Part shown: piece by piece, positions 3,279-27,030 of the stretch | How positions within the stretch are numbered: position 1 is the first letter of the stretch | Layout: every line of letters starts with the position of its first letter | Assembly (NCBI RefSeq): GCF_001194135.2 | Contig: NC_068981.1 | Location: forward strand, 27,201,061 to 27,257,327 | Source: Octopus bimaculoides | Taxonomy: Eukaryota | Reading direction: 5' to 3' | Length of the DNA: 56,267 bases | The notes under the pieces: model-generated | Databases searched by the model: none | What the model was told of the DNA's origin: nothing | Seen by the model: the letters and a program-made list of their open reading frames with translations, nothing else | Position numbers and translations under genes: made by a program

Positions 3279-4728
3279 ATATACACATATACATATATAT
3301 GTATGTTGTATGTATGTAAGTATATCTATAGATGTATAAATGTCTATATGTAGGCACATATATGTACATAACGGTATATACATATATAAATTCATATATT
3401 AATATGCATACATGAACATAACTTCATATGCGTACATACACATACACACATTTATTTATCTATGTTTTTATGTTGAAGTAAGAACGTCATATACAGACGG
3501 AAGATACGTGTGGAAGATGCTGCATTTCTCTATCCGTATTTGTTTGTGCGGTCGCAAGTGTGTGCATGTTTCTAGTTGTGTCTGGGAAAGAGTATATTCA
3601 ATATTTTTGTCCAAAATGAAATTTTGAGAAACACGAATATATATTATAAATTATCCAGAATCGAAGATTTTTCCGAAATAAAAAGACCAGCATGAAATAT
3701 TTACATGCGGGTGCGTGTGTGTATTTATGTGTGTGTATACATGTATATATATATATATATATATATNNNNNNNNNNNNNNNNNNNNNNNNNNNNNNNNNN
3801 NNNNNNNNNNNNNNNNNNNNNNNNNNNNNNNNNNNNNNNNNNNNNNNNNNNNNNNNNNNNNNNNNNNNNNNNNNNNNNNNNNNNNNNNNNNNNNNNNNNN
3901 NNNNNNNNNNNNNNNNNNNNNNNNNNNNNNNNNNNNNNNNNNNNNNNNNNNNNNNNNNNNNNNNNNNNNNNNNNNNNNNNNNNNNNNNNNNNNNNNNNNN
4001 NNNNNNNNNNNNNNNNNNNNNNNNNNNNNNNNNNNNNNNNNNNNNNNNNNNNNNNNNNNNNNNNNNNNNNNNNNNNNNNNNNNNNNNNNNNNNNNNNNNN
4101 NNNNNNNNNNNNNNNNNNNNNNNNNNNNNNNNNNNNNNNNNNNNNNNNNNNNNNNNNNNNNNNNNNNNNNNNNNNNNNNNNNNNNNNNNNNNNNNNNNNN
4201 NNNNNNNNNNNNNNNNNNNNNNNNNNNNNNNNNNNNNNNNNNNNNNNNNNNNNNNNNNNNNNNNNNNNNNNNNNNNNNNNNNNNNNNNNNNNNNNNNNNN
4301 NNNNNNNNNNNNNNNNNNNNNNNNNNNNNNNNNNNNNNNNNNNNNNNNNNNNNNNNNNNNNNNNNNNNNNNNNNNNNNNNNNNNNNNNNNNNNNNNNNNN
4401 NNNNNNNNNNNNNNNNNNNNNNNNNNNNNNNNNNNNNNNNNNNNNNNNNNNNNNNNNNNNNNNNNNNNNNNNNNNNNNNNNNNNNNNNNNNNNNNNNNNN
4501 NNNNNNNNNNNNNNNNNNNNNNNNNNNNNNNNNNNNNNNNNNNNNNNNNNNNNNNTATATATATATATATATGTATATACATACATACACACATACATAC
4601 ATACGTACATACGTACATATAAGCAATAATAAATCTCTGACCGATATGTAAACAGTAGCAGGAAATTTTAGAGTATATGTGCCACCTAAATGTGGCTCAC
4701 CCATATAGTATTTTGGTTTTGAAATCGG

Positions 4729-5796: not shown

Positions 5797-5883
<87 letters not shown>

Positions 5884-5955
5884 CACACANNNNNNNNNNN
5901 NNNNNNNNNNNNNNNNNNNNNNNNNNNNNNNNNNNNNNNNNNNNNNNNNNNNNNN

Positions 5956-5993
<38 letters not shown>

Positions 5994-6134
5994 TACATAT
6001 ATATACACTGATACATCTAAACACATAAGAGGTATGCATCATAGGATTCCTTGCACGCTAGAAAGAACAGCTAAGTTCCAAACCACTATAAGGGATAAAA
6101 TTTCGGAGGGATTGAAAACTAAAATATTTTTCTT

Positions 6135-6400
6135 TCCCTAACTAATGATTGGAAAGAAGGACAAATCGTAAAATTACCAAAAAAAAAAAAAAAAAAAANN
6201 NNNNNNNNAATTGTTGCGTAAAGAACAAGCCGGATTTAGGAAGAACTGTTCATGTGTAGATCAAATTGCCACTCTTCGCATCATCTTAGAGCAAAGCGCA
6301 GAGTGGAAATCACCGCTTTATATTAACTTTATTGATTTAGAAAAAGCATTTGATAGTGTAGATAAGGAGGGCTTATGGAAAATTAATGTGATAAAGCATT
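6135..6400 (+). mobile_element. RTE-like LINE reverse transcriptase fragment
   Basis: DWKEGQIVKLPKK before the 10-N gap, then LRKEQAGFRKNCSCVDQIATLRIILEQSAEWKSPLYINFIDLEKAFDSVD (QAGFR and FIDxxKAFDSV motifs). Confidence 0.85.
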
Positions 6401-6667
6401 TAAAATAAGCCCGCAGAATTTTCGGTCAAACTAAAGCGTTTGACCTAAGCAAAAAAAAAAAAATATATAAAACAAAAGTTAGTGTAATAGGTGTAAAAAA
6501 AAAAAAACTTGCTGTAAACGAATATGAAAAAAAAATGCGGGCTCACGAACGGGGTTGGAGGACTCGGAAAATTCAGAGGACTTGGAAAATTCACATCGTC
6601 AGACCTTGACCTTTAAACTCCAGTGTTTGACCCGAGGAAAAAAAAATGTCTGATAGTTGTACAACAA

Positions 6668-6683
6668 ACGAGGCATTTGTCTA
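6668..6683 (-). other. 28S rDNA R2 target-site remnant at the 3' junction of the R2 element
   Basis: Minus strand reads TAGACAAATGCCTCGT; the canonical 28S sequence immediately downstream of the R2 insertion site is TAGCCAAATGCCTCGT (15/16 identical). No other rDNA is seen in the window. Confidence 0.8.
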
Positions 6684-8580
6684 TTGCGAATATTGACTTT
6701 GCCAATTCTTTCCCTTTGATTATAGTGTGCGGTCCTTCTCATGCCTCGTCATTAGCGGCACGCACGAAAGCAGGCACTACAAAAAACTCATTCTTGGGGC
6801 GATTCCAACTGTCCCGCCAAGGGAACATATGAACCACCTATTTCGTCAATCCGGTATTATTGTCATATTTTATGATTTCAGTTACTCCTAGTCATCATAC
6901 AGGGATCCTGCCCGCAAGGTCCCTATGCTGAGAGCTAACTTCTAAGCATATTTTATGTGTGTAGCATAGCCGTCCTGCTGAGTAGTCGTCAGAATGACCT
7001 GTCCTTAATGTCCAAGGCATCTAGCGCCGCACTCGCAGGCCGGCACCAGGCACCACAGGCACCGATTATGAGTCCATGCACTTCTACCAGCCGATCAAAC
7101 TCTTGCAAAAGCAATGGTATGACCGGTCGATACGTGCACACTTTCTCAAGAGATGCCTATCTCAAGGCATCTCCGTGCCCCAACTGAACGGTCACGGCGA
7201 CTACTACTACTTTCTCAGGACGGCTAAAGACTAAGCTGGGCCACCCATCTATGAGAGTGCACCAGCTGGATGTCAGGTTCGTATTCGGTAGTGTCAGCAG
7301 GGAGCAACGGCAAGTCGAAGGAAGCTACTAATCGTTGATTCTGTTTGGCTAATCCCACAGAAACAGCAATCTTTTCACAGAGGTGTATCCCGACGTCAGA
7401 AGGTGTATATTACGGCGGATGACACATTTGGGGATCAGCCTCACCATCTGGTGAAAACTTAACCCGCCATCACGCCGGCTACTATATAGAAAGGAAGAAA
7501 TAGTGCCTGGAAGGTGAAGATACCATCTAACTCCTACATGGATGACTGTTAAGTCTCTCTTGAAGGCAGCACCTGCGTGAGACTATAAAATAGTCTCGAC
7601 AAATAGTACTCCTATAACAAGAGGAATTTCTGTCGGGGTTTCAGTGGAGCCCTGCTAATTTTATCGATATCCAGTGACACCTGCTCCACCGAATCTAAAC
7701 AAAATTCCCGACTCGAGCTCGAAGTCCATGTAGAAACATTAAATGCTAGGTAGGAAAGCACGTAGTCGTCGCCGTCATGCATGAAGCGTGAGGAGGCGAT
7801 GGGGCGACGTCCCGGCTGCGTGAGCGAAAGCATGTACGTGCACAGCAGTGACGACAGCTAGGCGCAGGCGAGAAAGGAACCGAACGTTTGAAGGTTAGAG
7901 GACGAATGAGCTGAACTGCGGCGGCTGCTGACGAGCGAGCTAGCGAAGCTACCGGGTTGCGAAGCATAGGATGACTGCGACAGCAAGGGTGAGGGCGCTC
8001 ACGTTAGGGTGGGCGAGGTGGCGGCGGAAAGTTTGGGGCACGCCGGATGTTTAGGGTCGAGACGCACGCGGTAGCGTGGGGCTACCCGTTGGCAGAATGG
8101 AGCGACGAGGACACTTCTTCCAGACAGTTACCCCTTCCGATCAGCAACAACCCTACATAATAGTATGGACCAGAGGGTCCATACTACTATGGACTTCCTG
8201 CGATTGTCATCTAGAGTGTGACTGTTCTACGTGGCGCATCCGGTGATTTCCCGGACACACCACGTCAGGGTATCGACCAAGTGGCTCACGCAGTCCCGCC
8301 AGTGACAGCCGCCAAGCTGCCAGCATCGGCTGCAGTAGCGTCCACGATGATGAGCGCATGAGCTCGAGCTTTCGTGCTGAAAGCACGATCGCGAGCACGA
8401 AAGCACGGAGATATCGGCGTATTGCAGTCGATGCAGGCAGCGCAGTGGAGAGGGCAACCGGCTGACTGGCGGTAACGACCACACCGTCTCGGCCCGGTCG
8501 GCGGGAGAGCTACGAGGCTGGCTGGCAGCGGCAGCATCGGACGCGGGACGCGGGTGGATGTGAAGGACGACACCGCGCCC
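6684..8580 (-). mobile_element. Internally deleted, decayed R2-clade non-LTR retrotransposon (zinc-finger/Myb remnants, RT-end/thumb, REL endonuclease C-terminus, about 250-nt 3'UTR)
   Basis: Minus-strand translations read SYLAFNVSTW...DIDKISRAPLKPRQKFLLL*EYYLSRLFYSL (7833-7561) and VRWYLHLPGTISSFLYSSRRDGGLSF (about 7530-7450). Further down they read VVVVAVTVQLGHGDALR*ASLEKVCTY...VEVHGLIIGACGAW...LLSRTAML (about 7215-6960). These match the R2 motifs APLKPQQ, WLHLP..GGLG and the REL domain. The upstream RDRAFSTKARAH resembles a degenerate CCHH finger. Stops and frameshifts are present, and most of the RT and the Zn knuckle are missing. Confidence 0.85.
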
Positions 8581-9600
8581 CTCCAGGCTAATGCTGAGTC
8601 CAAAAGTCTTGCAGGAAACAGAAATACGATTCATAAGTATTTGCATGACATCCATTGTATGAGTGACTAAGTCACAGTCATCTGCATAAAGGATGTTGTG
8701 AAAGAGACTGGAAAACTTTTGAACTGGCAGCAAATCGGCGCAGATTATAGAGGCGGCCAGTAGATCGATATCTGACATATATTCCCAGAGAGCTCACCTT
8801 AGCAAAAACATGAGTAAATCCTACCGCATTCTTTGGCGACAAGGAGGCGACTTTATATCTAGTATGGGCCGCCTACATGCAGGTCGCTGACTACATGTTT
8901 CCAACCCGTCAGGTCTGCATGCTTCACCACATTCCCATGGCCACAGGACTTCCGAATGAAAAGAAATGTACTAAAAATATATAAATATATATACTAAAAG
9001 TAAAATGAATATATATAGGGGAAAAAAACAAATAAACGCACATATCGAGCAGAGATCAGCAATAGCTGTGCAGAGTTTTAGATCCAATAAGGCTGGCACA
9101 ACACCTCATGGACCCTGTCCAACTCATAGACCCTGTCCACCTCATAGACCCTGTCCAACTCCATAGACCCTGTCCACCTCATAGTCCCTGTCCAGATACA
9201 AGCCGGAGCAAGATGTTTGGTGCCAATATGAGTCGCAGGTTCAGGGATGTGGGAGCGCCCTGATCTCTAGCACAAACCAAAGATCCTCAAAACGTCCAAT
9301 GCCATTCCCTGCATATCTGCTTTCATATCGAAGTGACATTCCACCAGAGACATGCTTGAACAGAAGCTTCGGGGTCCCACAATCCTAGTGGTCTTTCAGC
9401 ACGCCGGACAGCATTCCGGAATTTCTGCGTACCCGTGGTATTACTATATAGCCATGAGCCTACAGTAGGTTCATCCGACTTTTGAACAGGTCTTGTATTT
9501 CCGACCTTTCAACAGGTCCTGCTAGGTGTCTAGCAACTCCCCTCACAAAACTATCTGACAAGTGGGAACGTGAAACTCTGAGTAACAGGTTTTGTGATAT
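8581..9600 (-). mobile_element. Internally deleted RTE-clade LINE (putative 5' region, start of AP endonuclease, RT segment around YADD)
   Basis: 8790-8585 reads GIYVRYRSTGRLYNLRRFAASSKVF...ILYADDCDLVTHTMDVMQILMNRISVSCKTFGLSISL, typical of RTE/BovB-like RT. About 8860-8815 reads SRLLVAKECGRIY, resembling the RTE endonuclease N-terminus (RSALVARELAR). Assignment of 8950-9600 as 5'UTR is tentative. Confidence 0.7.
9104..9194. repeat. 18-bp minisatellite, 5 units
   Basis: (c/a)ctcatagaccctgtcca x5; the first base alternates c,a,c,a,c and unit 4 has a 1-nt insertion. Confidence 0.95.
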
Positions 9601-9698
9601 TTTTGTTGCTTTTTAATAAAGCATATTACTCTACCTCTGGTAATCGAGTACTATTTTTCCCACCTTGCTTCGCATTTACGTGCTTACTCTGGTGTGTG

Positions 9699-9741
<43 letters not shown>

Positions 9742-10114
9742 CCCCCTCACAACTGAATGGATAGAACGTCTTAGATACATGCAAATTTAAACTTACTAAT
9801 ACATACGTACAAGCAAACACAATCATATAAACACGTATACACACTCACATATATACGTATAATCTTAAAGTATACGCATATATACACTTATCCATCTACA
9901 CATATATATGTCTATTTTCGCAAACAACGATTAAAACTGAAATTTCTTTATACATATTCATATATATATATATACACACACATACACACACGCGCGCGCA
10001 TATATATATATATATAATATATNNNNNNNNNNNNNNNNNNNNNNNNNNNNNNNNNNNNNNNNNNNNNNNNNNNNNNNNNNNNNNNNNNNNNNNNNNNNNN
10101 NNNNNNNNNNNNNN

Positions 10115-10154
<40 letters not shown>

Positions 10155-11406
10155 CACACATACTCATATGTGCATGCATGTACCCACTCATACAAACACA
10201 TATACTCAAACAACACATACACACACATACATACGCACGCTATAATACACATACATCCTGTAGCTGGCTGGATGTGGTGTGCCATATCAATTCGATACGA
10301 TGTAGCCCACTACTAATTTAGAGTATAGATGTAACGCTTCAGGGTTCTCGCGTCGGAGTAACCAGCGAACATCGAAGAATTAGCACCAAGAAGGAAGAAA
10401 TCCTAATTACATATTTATTCCTTCACACGAAAGGTTGTTAAAGAGACAGTAGACATTCTTGTGGTAGTTATGACAAGGATGACTTGCTGATTAATAGTTG
10501 ATATGGTTGTCCGTCAGTAGAGAGTGAAAGAGTAAGGTGGTCATGGTGCTGACTAGAAAGGAAGAAAGGATAAAGGCAGCTTCGTCTTTTTTACGGTCGA
10601 AAACCTCTCTTAGCATGCTGAACGAAGGGCGAAGGGAAGTGCTGCTCTTGGTCAAGGTTGATGCAAAGCATGATTTCTGTAATTAATTGCGGTAGCACAT
10701 TTCTCTTTGAGAATGCTCTCTGACACACGGTTTCTGTTTTATTATAACTTATACTCCACCGCTTCATCGTTTAATGGGAGAAAATACTTAAGAAATATAT
10801 ATATATATATATATATATANNNNNNNNNNNNNNNNNNNNNNNNNNNNNNNNNNNNNNNNNNNNNNNNNNNNNNNNNNNNNNNNNNNNNNNNNNNNNNNNN
10901 NNNNNNNNNNNNNNNNNNNNNNNNNNNNNNNNNNNNNNNNNNNNNNNNNNNNNNNNNNNNNNNNNNNNNNNNNNNNNNNNNNNNNNNNNNNNNNNNNNNN
11001 NNNNNNNNNNNNNNNNNNNNNNNNNNNNNNNNNNNNNNNNNNNNNNNNNNNNNNNNNNNNNNNNNNNNNNNNNNNNNNNNNNNNNNNNNNNNNNNNNNNN
11101 NNNNNNNNNNNNNNNNNNNNNNNNNNNNNNNNNNNNNNNNNNNNNNNNNNNNNNNNNNNNNNNNNNNNNNNNNNNNNNNNNNNNNNNNNNNNNNNNNNNN
11201 NNNNNNNNNNNNNNNNNNNNNNNNNNNNNNNNNNNNNNNNNNNNNNNNNNNNNNNNNNNNNNNNNNNNNNNNNNNNNNNNNNNNATATATATATATATAT
11301 GTTCAAAAAAAGGAAAAAGACAAAAAACAACAAGAATAAACAACAACGTGAGGAAGTGATACAGAATGTGTTACTGGATGCTCGGGAAAGGAAAGAAAGA
11401 GAATTT

Positions 11407-11433
11407 GACGTTTCGAGTGGAGCCCTTCGTCGG
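11407..11433 (-). ncRNA. Minimal hammerhead-like motif of the Penelope pLTR type
   Basis: Minus strand CCGACGA-AGGGCTCCACTC-GAAAC-GTC; resembles CTGANGA..GAAACGTC but with U4 changed to C and a weak stem I. Confidence 0.4.
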
Positions 11434-12028
11434 AAACAAAGTAAGTCCAAAGAAGAGAAAGACGGACGAAGAAAAAATCGCCAACGATATCCACGAGGTT
11501 ACATTGTAGAATGTATATATATATATATAAGGGCTTGTTGTTTATACCCAAGAAATAGACTTGTTTGTGCCCAAGAAATGGGTTTGCTGTTTGTACGAAA
11601 CAAATGGACAACGCACAGGTTATAATTATTTCTAAAACGCCATTCTCAATTAGTAAATTTTATTTCCCGTAACAATTTAAAGGAATGTTAAAGGGAATTT
11701 ATTTTAATGACATGAACTTTCTGTATAAAGAATCAAATGAAGAAAATGAAAAACAGTGGAAAGTTTTGTAATCAGGGACATGGTAATGTTGAATATTTAA
11801 GAGAATTTGCAGCGTATAAGATGTTTGTACGCAATTCCAGAACAACAAAAAACGTTTCTTTCACTGCATCATTTAAATTTCATTTGTGTCTAAATATTTT
11901 CGTTCTTTGAAACTACAGCAAAACCCTGACAAAAATTCGTGCTACATCTGTTTTGTTAGTGAACAAGTTTCGGTTTCAGAGCAATATTGAGATTGAAATG
12001 AGATATAAATTTTACAGTGAAACCAAAC

Positions 12029-12138
<110 letters not shown>

Positions 12139-13038
12139 TGCGTGTGCGCGTGTATTTTCTTGAATGGCTTACAAACATCTACGCTGCAATTATTTTTCTT
12201 AATACCATTCTGTGAAAGAGAATCGGATAAAGTTTGTGCGCAAAATTTTGTTTTCATCTTCATTTATAGCATAGATAATTTTTTCGTCTGAAATGCGACC
12301 TTCGGCCTCCAGGACACATTGGTCGGCCCAAGGCTATCGTTGAAACGACTTACTGGCGAACAGGGGTGGGGAGAGGACCAGGAGTATTCACACGATCGGA
12401 TTTTTTCCCTAAAGAAAATGGATATACTTCCCAACCGCAAGGTTCCGGGTACAGTACCACTGCATGGCATCTTGGGCAAACACTGGAGTTTAAAGGTTAT
12501 GTTTTTGTAGACCTATTTCNNNNNNNNNNNNNNNNNNNNNNNNNNNNNNNNNNNNNNNNNNNNNNNNNNNNNNNNNNNNNNNNNNNNNNNNNNNNNNNNN
12601 NNNNNNNNNNNNNNNNNNNNNNNNNNNNNNNNNNNNNNNNNNNNNNNNNNNNNNNNNNNNNNNNNNNNNNNNNNNNNNNNNNNNNNNNNNNNNNNNNNNN
12701 NNNNNNNNNNNNNNNNNNNNNNNNNNNNNNNNNNNNNNNNNNNNNNNNNNNNNNNNNNNNNNNNNNNNNNNNNNNNNNNNNNNNNNNNNNNNNNNNNNNN
12801 NNNNNNNNNNNNNNNNNNNNNNNNNNNNNNNNNNNNNNNNNNNNNNNNNNNNNNNNNNNNNNNNNNNNNNNNNNNNNNNNNNNNNNNNNNNNNNNNNNNN
12901 NNNNNNNNNNNNNNNNNNNNNNNNNNNNNNNNNNNNNNNNNNNNNNNNNNNNNNNNNNNNNNNNNNNNNNNNNNNNNNNNNNNNNNNNNNNNNNNNNNNN
13001 NNNNNNNNNNNNNNNNNNNNNNNNNNNNNNNNNNNNNN

Positions 13039-17170: not shown

Positions 17171-19161
17171 ACGAAATAATAATGATAATAATAATGATAA
17201 TAATAATACTTTCTACCTTATGAGACATTCCCGTTTTATATTTTACTCATATTGTATACAGAATTATGTTATCCAATGTATGTTATCCAACAAGTCTGCT
17301 GTTCTTTCATTGATAGACATTTGGTTGCTAATTCTAGACTCTCGAGCAAATATGTATATGCTGTCTCAATGGTTAGGACACTCCTTGTCATTTTTGCCAT
17401 AGACAGGTGACACTATATTTTTAGGAGTGAGTACTTCGAACGCAACTATTAACCTCCCCTTATAGGACGAGAGTCAAAATTGATTTCAGCGAGGTTTATA
17501 TATNNNNNNNNNNNNNNNNNNNNNNNNNNNNNNNNNNNNNNNNNNNNNNNNNNNNNNNNNNNNNNNNNNNNNNNNNNNNNNNNNNNNNNNNNNNNNNNNN
17601 NNNNNNNNNNNNNNNNNNNNNNNNNNNNNNNNNNNNNNNNNNNNNNNNNNNNNNNNNNNNNNNNNNNNNNNNNNNNNNNNNNNNNNNNNNNNNNNNNNNN
17701 NNNNNNNNNNNNNNNNNNNNNNNNNNNNNNNNNNNNNNNNNNNNNNNNNNNNNNNNNNNNNNNNNNNNNNNNNNNNNNNNNNNNNNNNNNNNNNNNNNNN
17801 NNNNNNNNNNNNNNNNNNNNNNNNNNNNNNNNNNNNNNNNNNNNNNNNNNNNNNNNNNNNNNNNNNNNNNNNNNNNNNNNNNNNNNNNNNNNNNNNNNNN
17901 NNNNNNNNNNNNNNNNNNNNNNNNNNNNNNNNNNNNNNNNNNNNNNNNNNNNNNNNNNNNNNNNNNNNNNNNNNNNNNNNNNNNNNNNNNNNNNNNNNNN
18001 NNNNNNNNNNNNNNNNNNNNNNNNNNNNNNNNNNNNNNNNNNNNNNNNNNNNNNNNNNNNNNNNNNNNNNNNTATATAGCTGAAGGATTAAAATTAATCA
18101 AACGACATACTAAGTATGTCTAACTGCTGGAAATAACAGTCAAAACTCTTATTTAAATCGACAAAATACACTGATGTTAACTCTACAGAAATCAATCAAA
18201 TGTAGGCAAACGGGCTGCCAACATATATTCAATCTCCCAACATGCATTCAAGTATTTGAACTCAGGTGGACTGGTTTCTGCACTGACAAAAATAACCTCA
18301 GCTTCCTCAGCGCGCCTTATCATGATAGAGACGCCGAACCCGTCATGTTGAAATCTGCGCTGCAACTGATTCGTTTTGAGCCGAAATCATGTCAGCCACC
18401 AGTGTGAAAATAATTTCAATACGGAGAAAATAATTCACGAGAAAAAATAATTCACAGGCACCTTCATTGGCTGTGCTACAACTTCATTATTTGAAACATC
18501 CTCCGATGTGTGCTCATCTGACACCATATTTTCAGTAAATGCAGTAATTAGTTCGAACGCAAAATGTTATATTCAAGCATTCTAAGACAATTAAACATTC
18601 ATAGCGAGCTATATCAATAGCATTCATAATTTTATTGAAAATATTTTTTTCAAAAACATTTAGTTCTCGGAACGGTGTAAAGTCTCCATAGTGAGAGATA
18701 ATTACGCAGTTTTTAGGTAAGAATATCTTTGCAAACAATATTCATTTTTATATATTCGTCACCTCTTCTACTTTGAGAGTAATCTATTATTTTTGTCATT
18801 CCATCAAGAATTAACACGAAGATACGTTCTACAGAGTGCTACGTACACCTGCCCATGAGAAAGTATTGTCTGCCAAAGAAATAACTGAAATGTTTGGCCT
18901 TCAGATTTGATATTGTAAATAAATATCTCTCTAAAACAAATGGAACGAAACGTATGGGCATCATTTGAACTGGGTTTGCCTAGTAGATTAAAATCGCTTA
19001 ATTTTCCTTCGTCTAATTTCTTGTATTTTATATCCGTCGTGTATTTTCGTGCAACTATCGTATAGGTTGGAAATCGTTGATAATTATTTTGATATAATTG
19101 AACAGTGTACGTACATATTTATAGCTATTTGTACTTTAAGTGAAGAGTACAAACAGCTGTT

Positions 19162-26069: not shown

Positions 26070-27030
26070 CTTTTTCTCCCCTTCACTGTACAGCTCCGAA
26101 ACAGCTGGGCTCTCTTACCTCAGGGAAGACCTAGATGGAAAGGACTCAGCATACAAAAAGATCATGCATGGGTATGTTGCACGGAAGCTTTGAGAAGACA
26201 TTGGAATTGACACGAAGCGCAGCCTCCCTTGGACACAAGACACTACATCACATCATACTTTGAAGGCTATGCGTTTGCACGCCAGGAACAAAAGATTGCC
26301 ACAAATTACCTGGTGAACAAGAGAGACAATGATGCTCTTGTAATCCCAAGGTGCAACCGCATGTGTAGGTTATGCCCTGTTTCTGTCGAAGACATTACGG
26401 ATCTGATTAGCAGCTGTCCTAAAATGTCAAGGTACTACCTCTCTATGCGGCACGATGTTGTTGCTAAAACAATTTACAATGCCATCCGCAAAAAAGACTG
26501 TCATGAAATAACTTATAAAATCCCTCTATTATGGAATAAATTCATAAATACCAACTCAAGGAATACTGGTGGAATATTCCATTCAAAACTTCTGTCAAAT
26601 GTAAGCATAACAAGCCGGATATTGTTGTTTGGGACAGAGTAAAAGGTATGTACCATCATAGAAGTTAGCCGTCCTGCAGATATAAATATCTCTTTGAAAT
26701 CGAAGAAAAAGCGGATACCTATGGACAACTTTCAGCTTCTATATCCAGACTATGAATTCATATTCATACCAATAATAATTGGAGCACTAGATTTTGTTAA
26801 TAAATGCTTAAAGGAGAATCTGGATTAACTGGGATTTTCAGAAAGAGACACTGACCGGCTGAATTGTACATTATAAGTGCAATCTATGAGTGGATCGGTA
26901 AAAAATATGCAAGATTTTTCTGAAGTTCCAAATGGGAATTCGTATGTGTTACCTAGATCCCAAAGATGGAGCCTTGTATCTTTGTTGGAAACCGGCTCTC
27001 GCCTCAGTGGAAGATTTATAAAAATTAAAA
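26070..27030 (+). mobile_element. R4-like non-LTR retrotransposon 3' fragment (Zn knuckle plus REL endonuclease plus 3'UTR)
   Basis: FEGYAFARQEQKIATNYL..CNRMCRLCPVSVEDITDLISSCPKMSRYYLSMRHDVVAKTIY, then PDIVVWDR..TIIEVS.PAD..LQLLYPDYEFIFIPIIIGAL in shifted frames. Confidence 0.85.

What the first reader, a model, noticed from the sequence alone, without database searches (positions are those of the whole stretch)
6668..8580. R2 retrotransposon outside rDNA that still carries the 28S target sequence at its 3' junction
Seen: R2-type protein motifs on the minus strand, then a 250-nt 3'UTR, then TAGACAAATGCCTCGT, then unrelated sequence. Established: R2 inserts at TTAAGG/TAGCCAAATGCCTCGTCATC in 28S rDNA and is normally co-transcribed with rRNA. 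Here the match is 15/16 at exactly the expected position, but there is no rDNA unit and no upstream 28S at the 5' end. Inference: either an R2 transcript with 28S read-through was copied to an ectopic locus, or this lineage uses dispersed 28S-like half sites. Either would be evidence of an octopus R2 lineage escaping rDNA.
Basis: partly seen in the sequence, partly recalled or inferred. Interest (0 to 1): 0.85.

Follow-up and report, generated by a model that had tools for sequence, protein, structure and literature searches.

The report
Dead octopus R2 copy outside rDNA
This is a broken, ancient copy of the ribosomal-gene-specific jumping gene R2 lying outside the ribosomal genes of an octopus, still carrying 16 bases of 28S rRNA gene at its tail. 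It is most likely a stray retro-copy of an R2 transcript that read through into 28S, a known kind of by-product and not a lineage that has left the rDNA.

Summary
On the minus strand, 7764..6935 is a decayed R2 thumb and restriction-like endonuclease (RLE). It is followed by a 251-nt 3'UTR (6934..6684) and then TAGACAAATGCCTCGT (6683..6668), a 15/16 match to the 28S sequence just 3' of the R2 site. No rRNA gene lies anywhere in the window.

An Octopus sinensis contig carries the orthologous locus with the same junction. Its 16-mer has a different single mismatch, so the ancestral 16-mer was a 16/16 match. The junction is therefore real and older than the species split.

Three further non-rDNA R2 copies in O. 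bimaculoides and O. vulgaris end at the same junction. Their authentic 28S tails are about 40, 91 and 247 nt long, and one copy also keeps about 20 nt of upstream 28S. The repeat that flanks the window copy has no 28S-like 16-mer in its other units.

The best reading is sporadic, dead-on-arrival retro-copies of R2/28S read-through RNA, as described for R1 in Drosophila. A lineage that uses dispersed half-sites or has escaped the rDNA is not supported. DNA-level dispersal of rDNA fragments is not excluded.

One extra finding: this copy's 3'UTR contains an antisense copy of the downstream 28S. An unrelated canonical R2 has one too.

The parts
6668..6683 (-). 16 nt of 28S rDNA (positions +1..+16 after the R2 insertion site), TAGACAAATGCCTCGT, a 15/16 match.
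   Evidence: The O. sinensis ortholog reads TAGCCAAATGCCTCAT, so the ancestral state was a 16/16 match. It is in register with the R2|28S junctions of L001 and L002.
6684..6934 (-). R2 3'UTR, 251 nt.
   Evidence: The stop TAG is at 6937..6935. The last ~50 nt align with the 3'UTR ends of L001, L002 and L003.
6741..6768 (-). Antisense-28S block B inside the 3'UTR. TTCGTGCGTGCCGCTA/ATGACGAGGCAT is the reverse complement of 28S +9..+41 with a 5-nt deletion.
   Evidence: The UTR x 28S duplex is -42.1 kcal/mol against -26.0 +/- 3.0 for shuffles (0 of 300 reach it).
6801..6815 (-). Antisense-28S block A inside the 3'UTR. GGGACAGTTGGAATC is the reverse complement of 28S +52..+66 (14/15).
   Evidence: The L003 ortholog also matches 14/15 but with a different mismatch.
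6935..7764 (-). Decayed R2 ORF remnant: end of the RT/fingers, thumb (ISRAPLKPRQKF...), linker and RLE endonuclease. The CCHC region is deleted at about 7235.
6424..6667 (-). 3' flank: units of a ~150-170 nt repeat (…TTTACAGCAAG|TTGTTTTACACCTATTACAC…). The R2 + 16-mer abuts it at TTGTTG, with a possible GT microhomology.
7765..8590 (.). GC-rich (57-66% GC), CpG-rich block of unknown origin. It replaces R2 residues ~572-716, which the O. sinensis ortholog still has. It is not part of R2.
8590..8817 (-). RT fragment (…LYADDCDLV…FGLSISLE) of a different, APE-type LINE. It is not R2.

Best explanation
The window holds an ancient, dead, 5'-truncated and internally deleted pseudo-copy of a three-zinc-finger (A-clade-like) R2 retrotransposon. 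It sits in repeat-rich, non-ribosomal DNA of an octopod.

Proposed origin (inferred). [quoted passage not shown] Its RNA kept downstream 28S sequence at the 3' end, because R2 has no known 3' processing signal. A reverse transcriptase, R2's own or another LINE's, then copied that RNA at a nick or break outside the rDNA. Synthesis started inside the 28S tail at about +16, perhaps on a GT microhomology, and stopped before the 5' end.

Result. An R2 3' end followed by a short 28S tag and then unrelated DNA. The copy could not function (no promoter, truncated) and has decayed since before the split from O. sinensis.

Shown: R2 identity, the 28S tag, the ectopic position, the orthology and age, the variable tails in sister copies, and the absence of the tag from the target repeat. 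Inferred: the RNA intermediate and the priming step.
For: (1) R2 identity. PDB hits are to R2 proteins only. L002's near-intact copy scores 5e-132 to R2Tg, against 5e-73 for R2Bm and 1e-8 for L1 ORF2. It has three N-terminal Cys/His fingers plus a Myb-like stretch. All of the closest full-length relatives whose contig reaches the 3' junction end at ...|TAGCCAAATGCCTCGTCATC.

(2) Orthology. Collinear blocks link window 8817-12497 to L003 7296-4072 at 83-95% identity. The R2 part aligns to L003 at 81-82%, and the second block (80.8%) runs through the UTR, the junction and about 200 nt of flank. L003 has the same 16-mer|TTGTTG junction.

(3) Independent ectopic copies. 28S tails are 16 nt (window/L003), about 40 nt (L002b), 91 nt (L001) and about 247 nt (L002a). 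The 5' ends also differ: residue 716 in the window, 572 in its ortholog L003, 335 in L001, 1 in L002a. No other LSU piece lies within +/-10 kb. Random rDNA fragments would not be expected to have such short 28S pieces.

(4) L002b. It keeps only about 18-21 nt of upstream 28S. That is within the 9-36 nt that R2 ribozymes leave on the RNA (PMC3774820). This stretch is joined through a GTA microhomology to an internal R2 fragment, as expected from R2 RT template jumping (Bibillo & Eickbush, cited in PMC2718515).

(5) Target repeat. Its other units lack the 16-mer.

(6) Precedent. Ectopic R1 copies in Drosophila carry up to 14 nt of downstream and 7-28 bp of upstream 28S. This was read as evidence that transcript ends carry 28S (PMC2718515, sections 14-15).
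Against: No target-site duplication or empty site could be defined for any copy. The 5' side of the window/L003 copy is rearranged and differs between the two species.

There are only four independent copies, and all were found through annotated protein fragments.

Two of the copies lie tail to tail 4.2 kb apart in L002. That hints at a local DNA-level event or a hotspot.

No octopus rDNA with a resident R2 could be examined, so the source element is inferred. GT microhomology fits end joining as well as priming.
Confidence: 0.6

Rival explanations
1. DNA-level dispersal. Pieces of R2-occupied rDNA units were moved out of the rDNA by recombination or captured during break repair. Later deletions and TE insertions trimmed them to R2 plus a stub of 28S.
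For: No TSDs were found, and the 5' flanks are rearranged. Two R2 copies lie 4.2 kb apart, tail to tail, in L002. The L002b structure is composite. Extra-rDNA R2 copies displaced by recombination are discussed for Drosophila (PMC2718515).
Against: All four 28S tails are 247 nt or shorter, and the only upstream piece is about 20 nt. No further LSU fragments lie within +/-10 kb. Three of the four independent copies are 5'-truncated or rearranged, as TPRT products are. The upstream stub in L002b has the length that ribozyme cleavage leaves.
Confidence: 0.2
2. R2 inserted by its normal endonuclease into a dispersed 28S fragment or a 28S-like half-site that was already at this locus.
For: Ectopic R1 targets in Drosophila share 4-9 bp with the 28S site (PMC2718515). 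The flank upstream of L001's R2 happens to end in ...GTAAGG.
Against: Other units of the flanking repeat have CAGCAAG|TTGTT with no 16-mer. No upstream 28S is present in the window, L001, L002a or L003. Tails run on into 91-247 nt of authentic 28S elsewhere. That means true 28S rather than a look-alike site, so each locus would need its own prior 28S insertion.
Confidence: 0.07
3. Assembly artefact: a chimeric contig joining an rDNA read to unrelated repeats.
For: The window is a gap-rich draft with 20 N runs.
Against: The region 6209..10022 has no gap. The same junction and flanks occur in an independent assembly of another species.
Confidence: 0.02

Closest known systems
R2 non-LTR retrotransposons, three-zinc-finger (A-clade / lineage A) type, e.g. 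R2Tg and oyster R2-1_CGi
   Same: It has the R2-type thumb and RLE endonuclease. Sister copies have the RT, the CCHC knuckle and three N-terminal fingers plus a Myb-like stretch. The 3' junction is exactly at ...|TAGCCAAATGCC of 28S. The best PDB matches are A-clade R2 proteins.
   Different: This copy is not in an rDNA unit. It is truncated, has lost the RT and CCHC regions, and is riddled with stops. No cephalopod R2 appears in the searchable literature. Mollusc R2s are known (PMC5035012, PMC12247875).
Non-28S insertions of R1, and extra-rDNA R2 copies, in Drosophila (Stage & Eickbush 2009, PMC2718515)
   Same: These are rDNA-specific elements found outside the rDNA that carry short pieces of flanking 28S: up to 14 nt downstream and 7-28 bp upstream for R1. 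They were interpreted as retrotransposition of transcripts whose ends carry 28S. The extra-rDNA R2 copies are incomplete and are not the source of active elements.
   Different: Here the element is R2 in a mollusc, and the tails reach 247 nt. TSDs and target similarity to the 28S site could not be shown. The copy is far older, being shared between species.
Non-target-specific R2 families R2NS-1_SMed and R2NS-1_CSi (Kojima et al. 2016, PMC5035012)
   Same: They are R2-clade elements found outside 28S genes.
   Different: Those families have many near-identical copies with no 28S at their junctions, which is a true loss of specificity. The octopus copies all still carry 28S from the canonical site and are degenerate.
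Fish R2 families with 28S-derived sequence in the 3'UTR (Kojima et al. 2016, PMC5035012)
   Same: A piece of 28S has become part of an R2 3'UTR.
   Different: As I read the paper's text, the fish sequence is a 28S-like stretch at the 3' end of the UTR, tied to a 110-130 bp upstream shift of the 5' junction. The paper's figure was not available, so orientation and source region are my reading. Here the 28S pieces are antisense, come from downstream of the site (+9..+66), and lie 57-131 nt inside the UTR.

Membership tests
R2 (R2 clade of non-LTR retrotransposons) | A C-terminal restriction-like (PD-(D/E)XK) endonuclease after the RT, instead of an N-terminal APE endonuclease. | tested here: met
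   Window 7240..6941 aligns to the RLE of R2 protein 9nl2 (residues 991-1093) and to residues 1016-1115 of the octopus R2 from L002. The catalytic residues are partly mutated in this dead copy.
R2 (R2 clade of non-LTR retrotransposons) | An R2-type thumb/linker following the RT (the APLKPxQK... motif). | tested here: met
   ISRAPLKPRQKFLLL at about 7650 aligns to 9nl2 residues 697-806 with a domain E-value of 1.7e-10.
R2 (R2 clade of non-LTR retrotransposons) | A CCHC zinc knuckle between the thumb and the endonuclease. | tested here: not met
   It is deleted in the window copy (residues 898-1015 missing). It is present in the L003 ortholog and in P0001-P0003 (…CPRCRLGAETISHVSGVC…). The loss is therefore secondary.
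R2 (R2 clade of non-LTR retrotransposons) | A reverse transcriptase domain and N-terminal zinc finger(s) plus Myb. | tested here: not met
   Both are absent from the window, which is 5'-truncated at residue 716. Sister copies have them: RVT_1 at 1.6e-18 in L002a, and three Cys/His fingers with a Myb-like stretch by eye in L002a and L002b. Pfam did not call the fingers.
R2 (R2 clade of non-LTR retrotransposons) | A 3' junction at the canonical 28S site, TTAAGG|TAGCCAAATGCCTCGTCATC. | tested here: met
   The match is 15/16 in the window and 15/16 in L003 with a different mismatch. It is 20/20 in L001 and L002a. Full-length relatives L004, L008-L011, L013 and L014 all end there.
R2 (R2 clade of non-LTR retrotransposons) | Residence within a 28S gene of an rDNA unit, allowing co-transcription. 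| tested here: not met
   There is no rRNA in the 56-kb window and no upstream 28S. This copy is ectopic.
R2 (R2 clade of non-LTR retrotransposons) | A 5' HDV-like self-cleaving ribozyme. | tested here: inconclusive
   The 5' end is absent from the window. Rfam finds nothing in the 5'UTR of L002b, but Rfam may not model R2 ribozymes.
Ectopic retro-copies of rDNA-element read-through transcripts (as for non-28S R1 insertions) | An intact element 3' end followed by a short, variable stretch of downstream 28S. | tested here: met
   Tails are 16, about 40, 91 and about 247 nt in four independent loci.
Ectopic retro-copies of rDNA-element read-through transcripts (as for non-28S R1 insertions) | A target-site duplication, or a defined empty site. 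| tested here: inconclusive
   No TSD is recognisable. The 5' flanks are other TEs or rearranged DNA. No outgroup empty site was available.

The most novel reading that the evidence does not exclude
Some R2 lineages carry, inside the 3'UTR, an antisense copy of the 28S sequence just downstream of their insertion site. Two examples were seen. In the octopus window/L003 copy the blocks match 28S +9..+41 and +52..+66. In L008, an unrelated canonical R2 with about 34% protein identity, the block matches +44..+75.

This would be a functional element. In the R2/28S co-transcript it would pair with the read-through 28S tail, placing the R2|28S junction at the tip of a long hairpin. That could define or protect the RNA's 3' end, or allow pairing with the sense strand of the target DNA. 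The short 28S tags on ectopic copies would then be a footprint of that RNA 3'-end biology.
Probability: 0.2. Interest if true: 0.7.

Novelty: new member of a known kind. Interest (0 to 1): 0.35.

Why it matters
Taken alone, the finding is a fossil. It shows that octopods have, or had, a canonical 28S-specific, three-finger R2, which the searchable literature does not describe for cephalopods. It also shows that R2 occasionally leaves dead copies elsewhere in the genome.

The variable 28S tags of 16 to 247 nt, together with a ~20-nt upstream stub in one copy, give a natural record of what the ends of R2 RNA look like in vivo. The 3' end of R2 RNA is poorly defined experimentally, and it matters to groups engineering R2 for gene insertion.

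The antisense-28S blocks in the 3'UTR would be the more interesting result if they prove to be a recurrent, selected feature. They suggest RNA-RNA or RNA-DNA pairing at the target that current R2 models do not include.

Tried and rejected
1. Rfam on the whole window and on 5800..9800 found no rRNA, no R2 3'UTR element and no ribozyme. The only hits were microsatellite-driven miRNA false positives.

2. Pfam found nothing on the stitched window peptide. PDB phmmer was needed to identify it.

3. More octopus copies were sought by protein search. Three searches returned only P0001-P0004 and P0013. P0001 and two window ORFs are not on record as genes. No tool can search eukaryotic genome DNA, so a real census of copies was impossible.

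4. A TSD search around L001, L002a, L002b and L003 found none. The LINE that abuts L001's R2 does not resume after the 28S tail.

5. The idea that the GC-rich block 7765..8590 is rDNA spacer or the R2 5'UTR found no support. It has no similarity to any fetched locus, no Rfam hit and no coding signal. Its origin remains unknown.

6. The idea that L001 and L002a share a 5' truncation point was rejected. L002a continues upstream to the N-terminus.

7. Antisense-28S is not general. It is not significant in L001, L002a, L004, L009, L010/L011 or L013/L014.

8. A search for an HDV-like ribozyme in the L002b 5'UTR with Rfam found nothing.

Full report
**1. What is in the window**

Read on the minus strand, the region has this layout:
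- single-copy flank down to 8817;
- an RT fragment of an APE-type LINE at 8817..8590 (…LYADDCDLV…FGLSISLE);
- a GC-rich block at 8590..7765;
- an R2 remnant at 7764..6935;
- a 251-nt 3'UTR at 6934..6684;
- the 16-mer TAGACAAATGCCTCGT at 6683..6668;
- units of a ~150-170 nt repeat at 6667..~6424;
- on the plus strand, an RT fragment of another LINE at 6211..6408 (Pfam RVT_1, E = 2.8e-6, just below Pfam's cut-off).

The window is a gap-rich draft with 20 N runs, but 6209..10022 is gap-free.

**2. It is R2**

- A stitched translation of the remnant hits only R2 proteins among solved structures. The hits are 9nl2 at 1.1e-16, 9nl3 and R2Tg at about 3e-11 to 5e-11, and R2Bm at 2.6e-5. Thumb and restriction-like endonuclease (RLE) align separately.
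- In 5.8 billion proteins the only hits at E <= 1e-3 are four Octopus fragments, from O. bimaculoides, O. vulgaris and O. sinensis.
- Their loci were fetched as L001, L002 and L003.
- L002 holds a nearly intact copy, L002a, of 1116 codons with two stops and one small deletion. It has three N-terminal Cys/His fingers, a Myb-like stretch, RT, thumb, CCHC and RLE.
- The L002a conceptual protein matches A-clade R2s at 5e-132 to 2e-127. R2Bm scores 5e-73 and L1 ORF2 scores 1e-8.
- Against L002a, the window fragment covers residues 716-1115. It lacks 898-1015, including the CCHC knuckle, and has at least 3 frameshifts and at least 6 internal stops.
- The closest full-length relatives from other organisms share about 28-35% identity with it. 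The contigs that reach the 3' junction (L004, L008-L011, L013, L014) all end at …|TAGCCAAATGCCTCGTCATC. Three of the relatives (L004, L012, L013) also show upstream 28S at the 5' end; L012 does not reach its 3' junction.
- The family is therefore a bona fide 28S-specific R2, not NeSL, R4, R8 or R9. This rests on target site and nearest neighbours. A formal tree with those outgroups could not be built here.

**3. The 16-mer is real 28S flank, in register**

- It is the only match in the window.
- In alignment A1 it lines up with the R2|28S junctions of L001 and L002a.
- There the 28S continues for 91 nt in L001 (10887-10976/7, with CpG-to-TpG decay).
- In L002a it continues for about 247 nt (10914 to ~11160; Rfam LSU, 148 bits).
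- So it is not an internal part of the UTR.
- No rRNA occurs elsewhere in the window, and no upstream 28S was found.

**4. The junction is real and old**

- L003, an O. sinensis contig, is the orthologous locus.
- Five collinear blocks link window 8817-12497 to L003 7296-4072 at 83-95% identity.
- The R2 part aligns to L003 at 81-82%. The second block (80.8%) runs through the UTR, the junction and about 200 nt of 3' flank.
- L003 reads …CACAA|TAGCCAAATGCCTCAT|TTGTTGCACA….
- The two species differ from 28S at different positions of the 16-mer. The ancestral tag was therefore 16/16, and the insertion predates their split.
- L003 keeps the 358 nt (CCHC region) that the window has lost, and its R2 homology extends further 5', to residue 572. 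In the window that stretch is replaced by the GC-rich block. That block has CpG o/e of about 0.9-1.2 and no match in any fetched locus; its origin is unexplained.
- The window species is an octopod other than O. sinensis. This is inferred from the identities; the record itself could not be found.

**5. Where the tag came from**

- The 3' flank is a repeat whose other units read …TTTACAGCAAG|TTGTTTTACACCTATTACAC….
- At the junction, the same TTGTTG… is preceded by …GCCTCGT instead.
- The 16-mer is thus not part of the target. It arrived with the R2, with GT as a possible 2-nt overlap. This counts against a pre-existing half-site.

| Copy | R2 residues present | Downstream 28S tail |
|---|---|---|
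| Window / L003 | 716-1116 / 572-1116 | 16 nt |
| L002b | composite | ~40 nt |
| L001 | 335-1116 | 91 nt |
| L002a | 1-1116 | ~247 nt |

- Within +/-10 kb of these copies no further LSU sequence is present.
- L002b lies on the minus strand at 17364 to 15378 and is composite. In order, it contains:
  - an R2 thumb-to-CCHC fragment;
  - a GTA overlap;
  - about 18-21 nt of upstream 28S (ACTATGACTC…TTTAGG);
  - the R2 5'UTR, fingers and Myb;
  - an internal deletion;
  - the last ~40 nt of the 3'UTR;
  - about 40 nt of downstream 28S.
- The length of the upstream stub fits the 9-36 nt that R2 ribozymes leave on the RNA in many lineages (PMC3774820).
- The microhomology joint looks like the template jump for which the R2 RT is known (cited in PMC2718515).
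- Drosophila offers a direct precedent. Ectopic R1 copies carry up to 14 nt of downstream and 7-28 bp of upstream 28S. This was taken to show that the transcript ends carry 28S. Extra-rDNA R2 copies exist there too, and are incomplete and not the source of active elements (PMC2718515).
- Downstream 28S on the RNA template is known to affect R2 priming (Luan & Eickbush 1996, cited in PMC12203849).

**6. Verdict on mechanism**

- The most likely origin, at about 0.6, is sporadic reverse transcription of R2/28S read-through RNA at non-rDNA breaks. This gives dead-on-arrival copies tagged with variable 28S tails.
- DNA-level dispersal of rDNA fragments, at about 0.2, is not excluded. No TSD or empty site could be defined, the 5' side is rearranged, and two copies sit 4.2 kb apart in L002.
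- Insertion into a pre-existing 28S fragment or half-site (about 0.07) and misassembly (about 0.02) are unlikely.
- Nothing indicates a lineage that replicates outside the rDNA.

**7. Side observation: antisense 28S in the 3'UTR**

- The 3'UTR of the window copy contains two blocks that are the reverse complement of 28S just downstream of the insertion site.
- Block A at 6815..6801 is GGGACAGTTGGAATC, matching +52..+66 at 14/15. L003 also matches 14/15, at a different position.
- Block B at 6768..6741 matches +9..+41 with a 5-nt deletion (24/28).
- The predicted UTR x 28S duplex is -42.1 kcal/mol, against -26.0 +/- 3.0 for shuffles (0 of 300 reach it). For L003 it is -38.2 (1 of 300).
- L001 and L002a are not significant.
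- One of the five unrelated canonical R2s whose 3'UTR could be tested, L008, has a 3'UTR block antisense to +44..+75. Its local alignment score is 30 against a null maximum of 25 (0 of 500).
- The other four show nothing.
- The pattern could reflect recurrent capture or a selected pairing element. Only a broad survey can tell.

**8. Novelty**

- R2 in molluscs is known (PMC5035012, PMC12247875).
- No paper on octopus R2 was found.
- Ectopic copies of rDNA-specific elements carrying 28S tags are a known kind.
- The finding is therefore a new member of a known kind and of modest interest. The antisense-28S element is the one lead that could be more.

Noticed in passing
window 6815..6801 and 6768..6741 (minus strand); L003 ~11070-11135; L008 ~4238-4272: The R2 3'UTR contains antisense copies of the 28S sequence just downstream of the insertion site: +52..+66 and +9..+41 in the octopus copy, and +44..+75 in L008, an unrelated canonical R2. 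The predicted duplex with the read-through 28S tail is far stronger than for shuffled sequences. The signal is not significant in six other R2 3'UTRs.
   Followed up: partly
window 7765..8590: An 826-nt GC-rich (57-66% GC) block with CpG o/e of about 0.9-1.2 sits in an AT-rich, CpG-poor neighbourhood. It is absent from the O. sinensis ortholog, where R2 RT sequence lies instead. It has no similarity to any fetched locus, no Rfam hit and no coding signal. It contains a 16-bp hairpin at 8156-8191.
   Followed up: partly
L002 15378..17364 (minus strand) and 6930..11160 (plus strand): Two ectopic R2 copies lie tail to tail, 4.2 kb apart, on O. vulgaris chromosome OX597831.1. One is nearly intact, with only two stops. 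The other is a composite with an apparent template-jump joint (GTA microhomology), about 20 nt of upstream 28S, an internal deletion and about 40 nt of downstream 28S.
   Followed up: partly
window 6424..6667; L003 3630-4091 (opposite orientation) and 11166-11560; window 12474-12497: A ~150-170 nt repeat unit (…GGTCAAACACTGGAGTTTAAAGGTCAAGGTCTGACGATGTGAA…TTTACAGCAAGTTGTTTTACACCTATTACAC…) flanks the R2 copy. It recurs in inverted orientation about 7 kb away on the other side of the locus in L003.
   Followed up: partly
window 8590..8817 (minus strand) versus L003 7296-9345: The 5' side differs between the two species. O. sinensis has a long APE-type LINE (5'UTR to early RT) followed by a 123-nt inverted RT piece. 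The window has only a later RT piece of the same LINE family, in the opposite relative orientation, sharing a 39-nt overlap. This points to an inversion/deletion history that was not resolved.
   Followed up: partly
L010 7119-7143 and L011 5590-5614: In a canonical R2 from freshwater metagenomes, the 3'UTR ends with GTTCGTAACTAGGACTCTCTTAAGA, a 28S-upstream-like 25-mer, directly before TAGCC. This resembles the 28S-derived 3'UTR ends reported for fish R2.
   Followed up: no
L001 2657..3004: A second, more divergent R2-like fragment lies 5 kb from the L001 R2 copy. It shares 38% identity with the region just N-terminal of the RT core.
   Followed up: no
window 26229..26642 (plus strand): A 137-codon ORF has a C-x2-C…H…C…RHD motif (CRLCPVSVEDITDLISSCPKMSRYYLSMRHD) and a weak zf-RVT hit (E = 0.057). 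It is probably the C-terminal remnant of another LINE.
   Followed up: partly
window 5800..6020, 9670..9770 and many other places: Long TA/CA microsatellites border most N gaps. They produce spurious sub-threshold Rfam hits to mir-297, mir-466 and mir-1277.
   Followed up: yes
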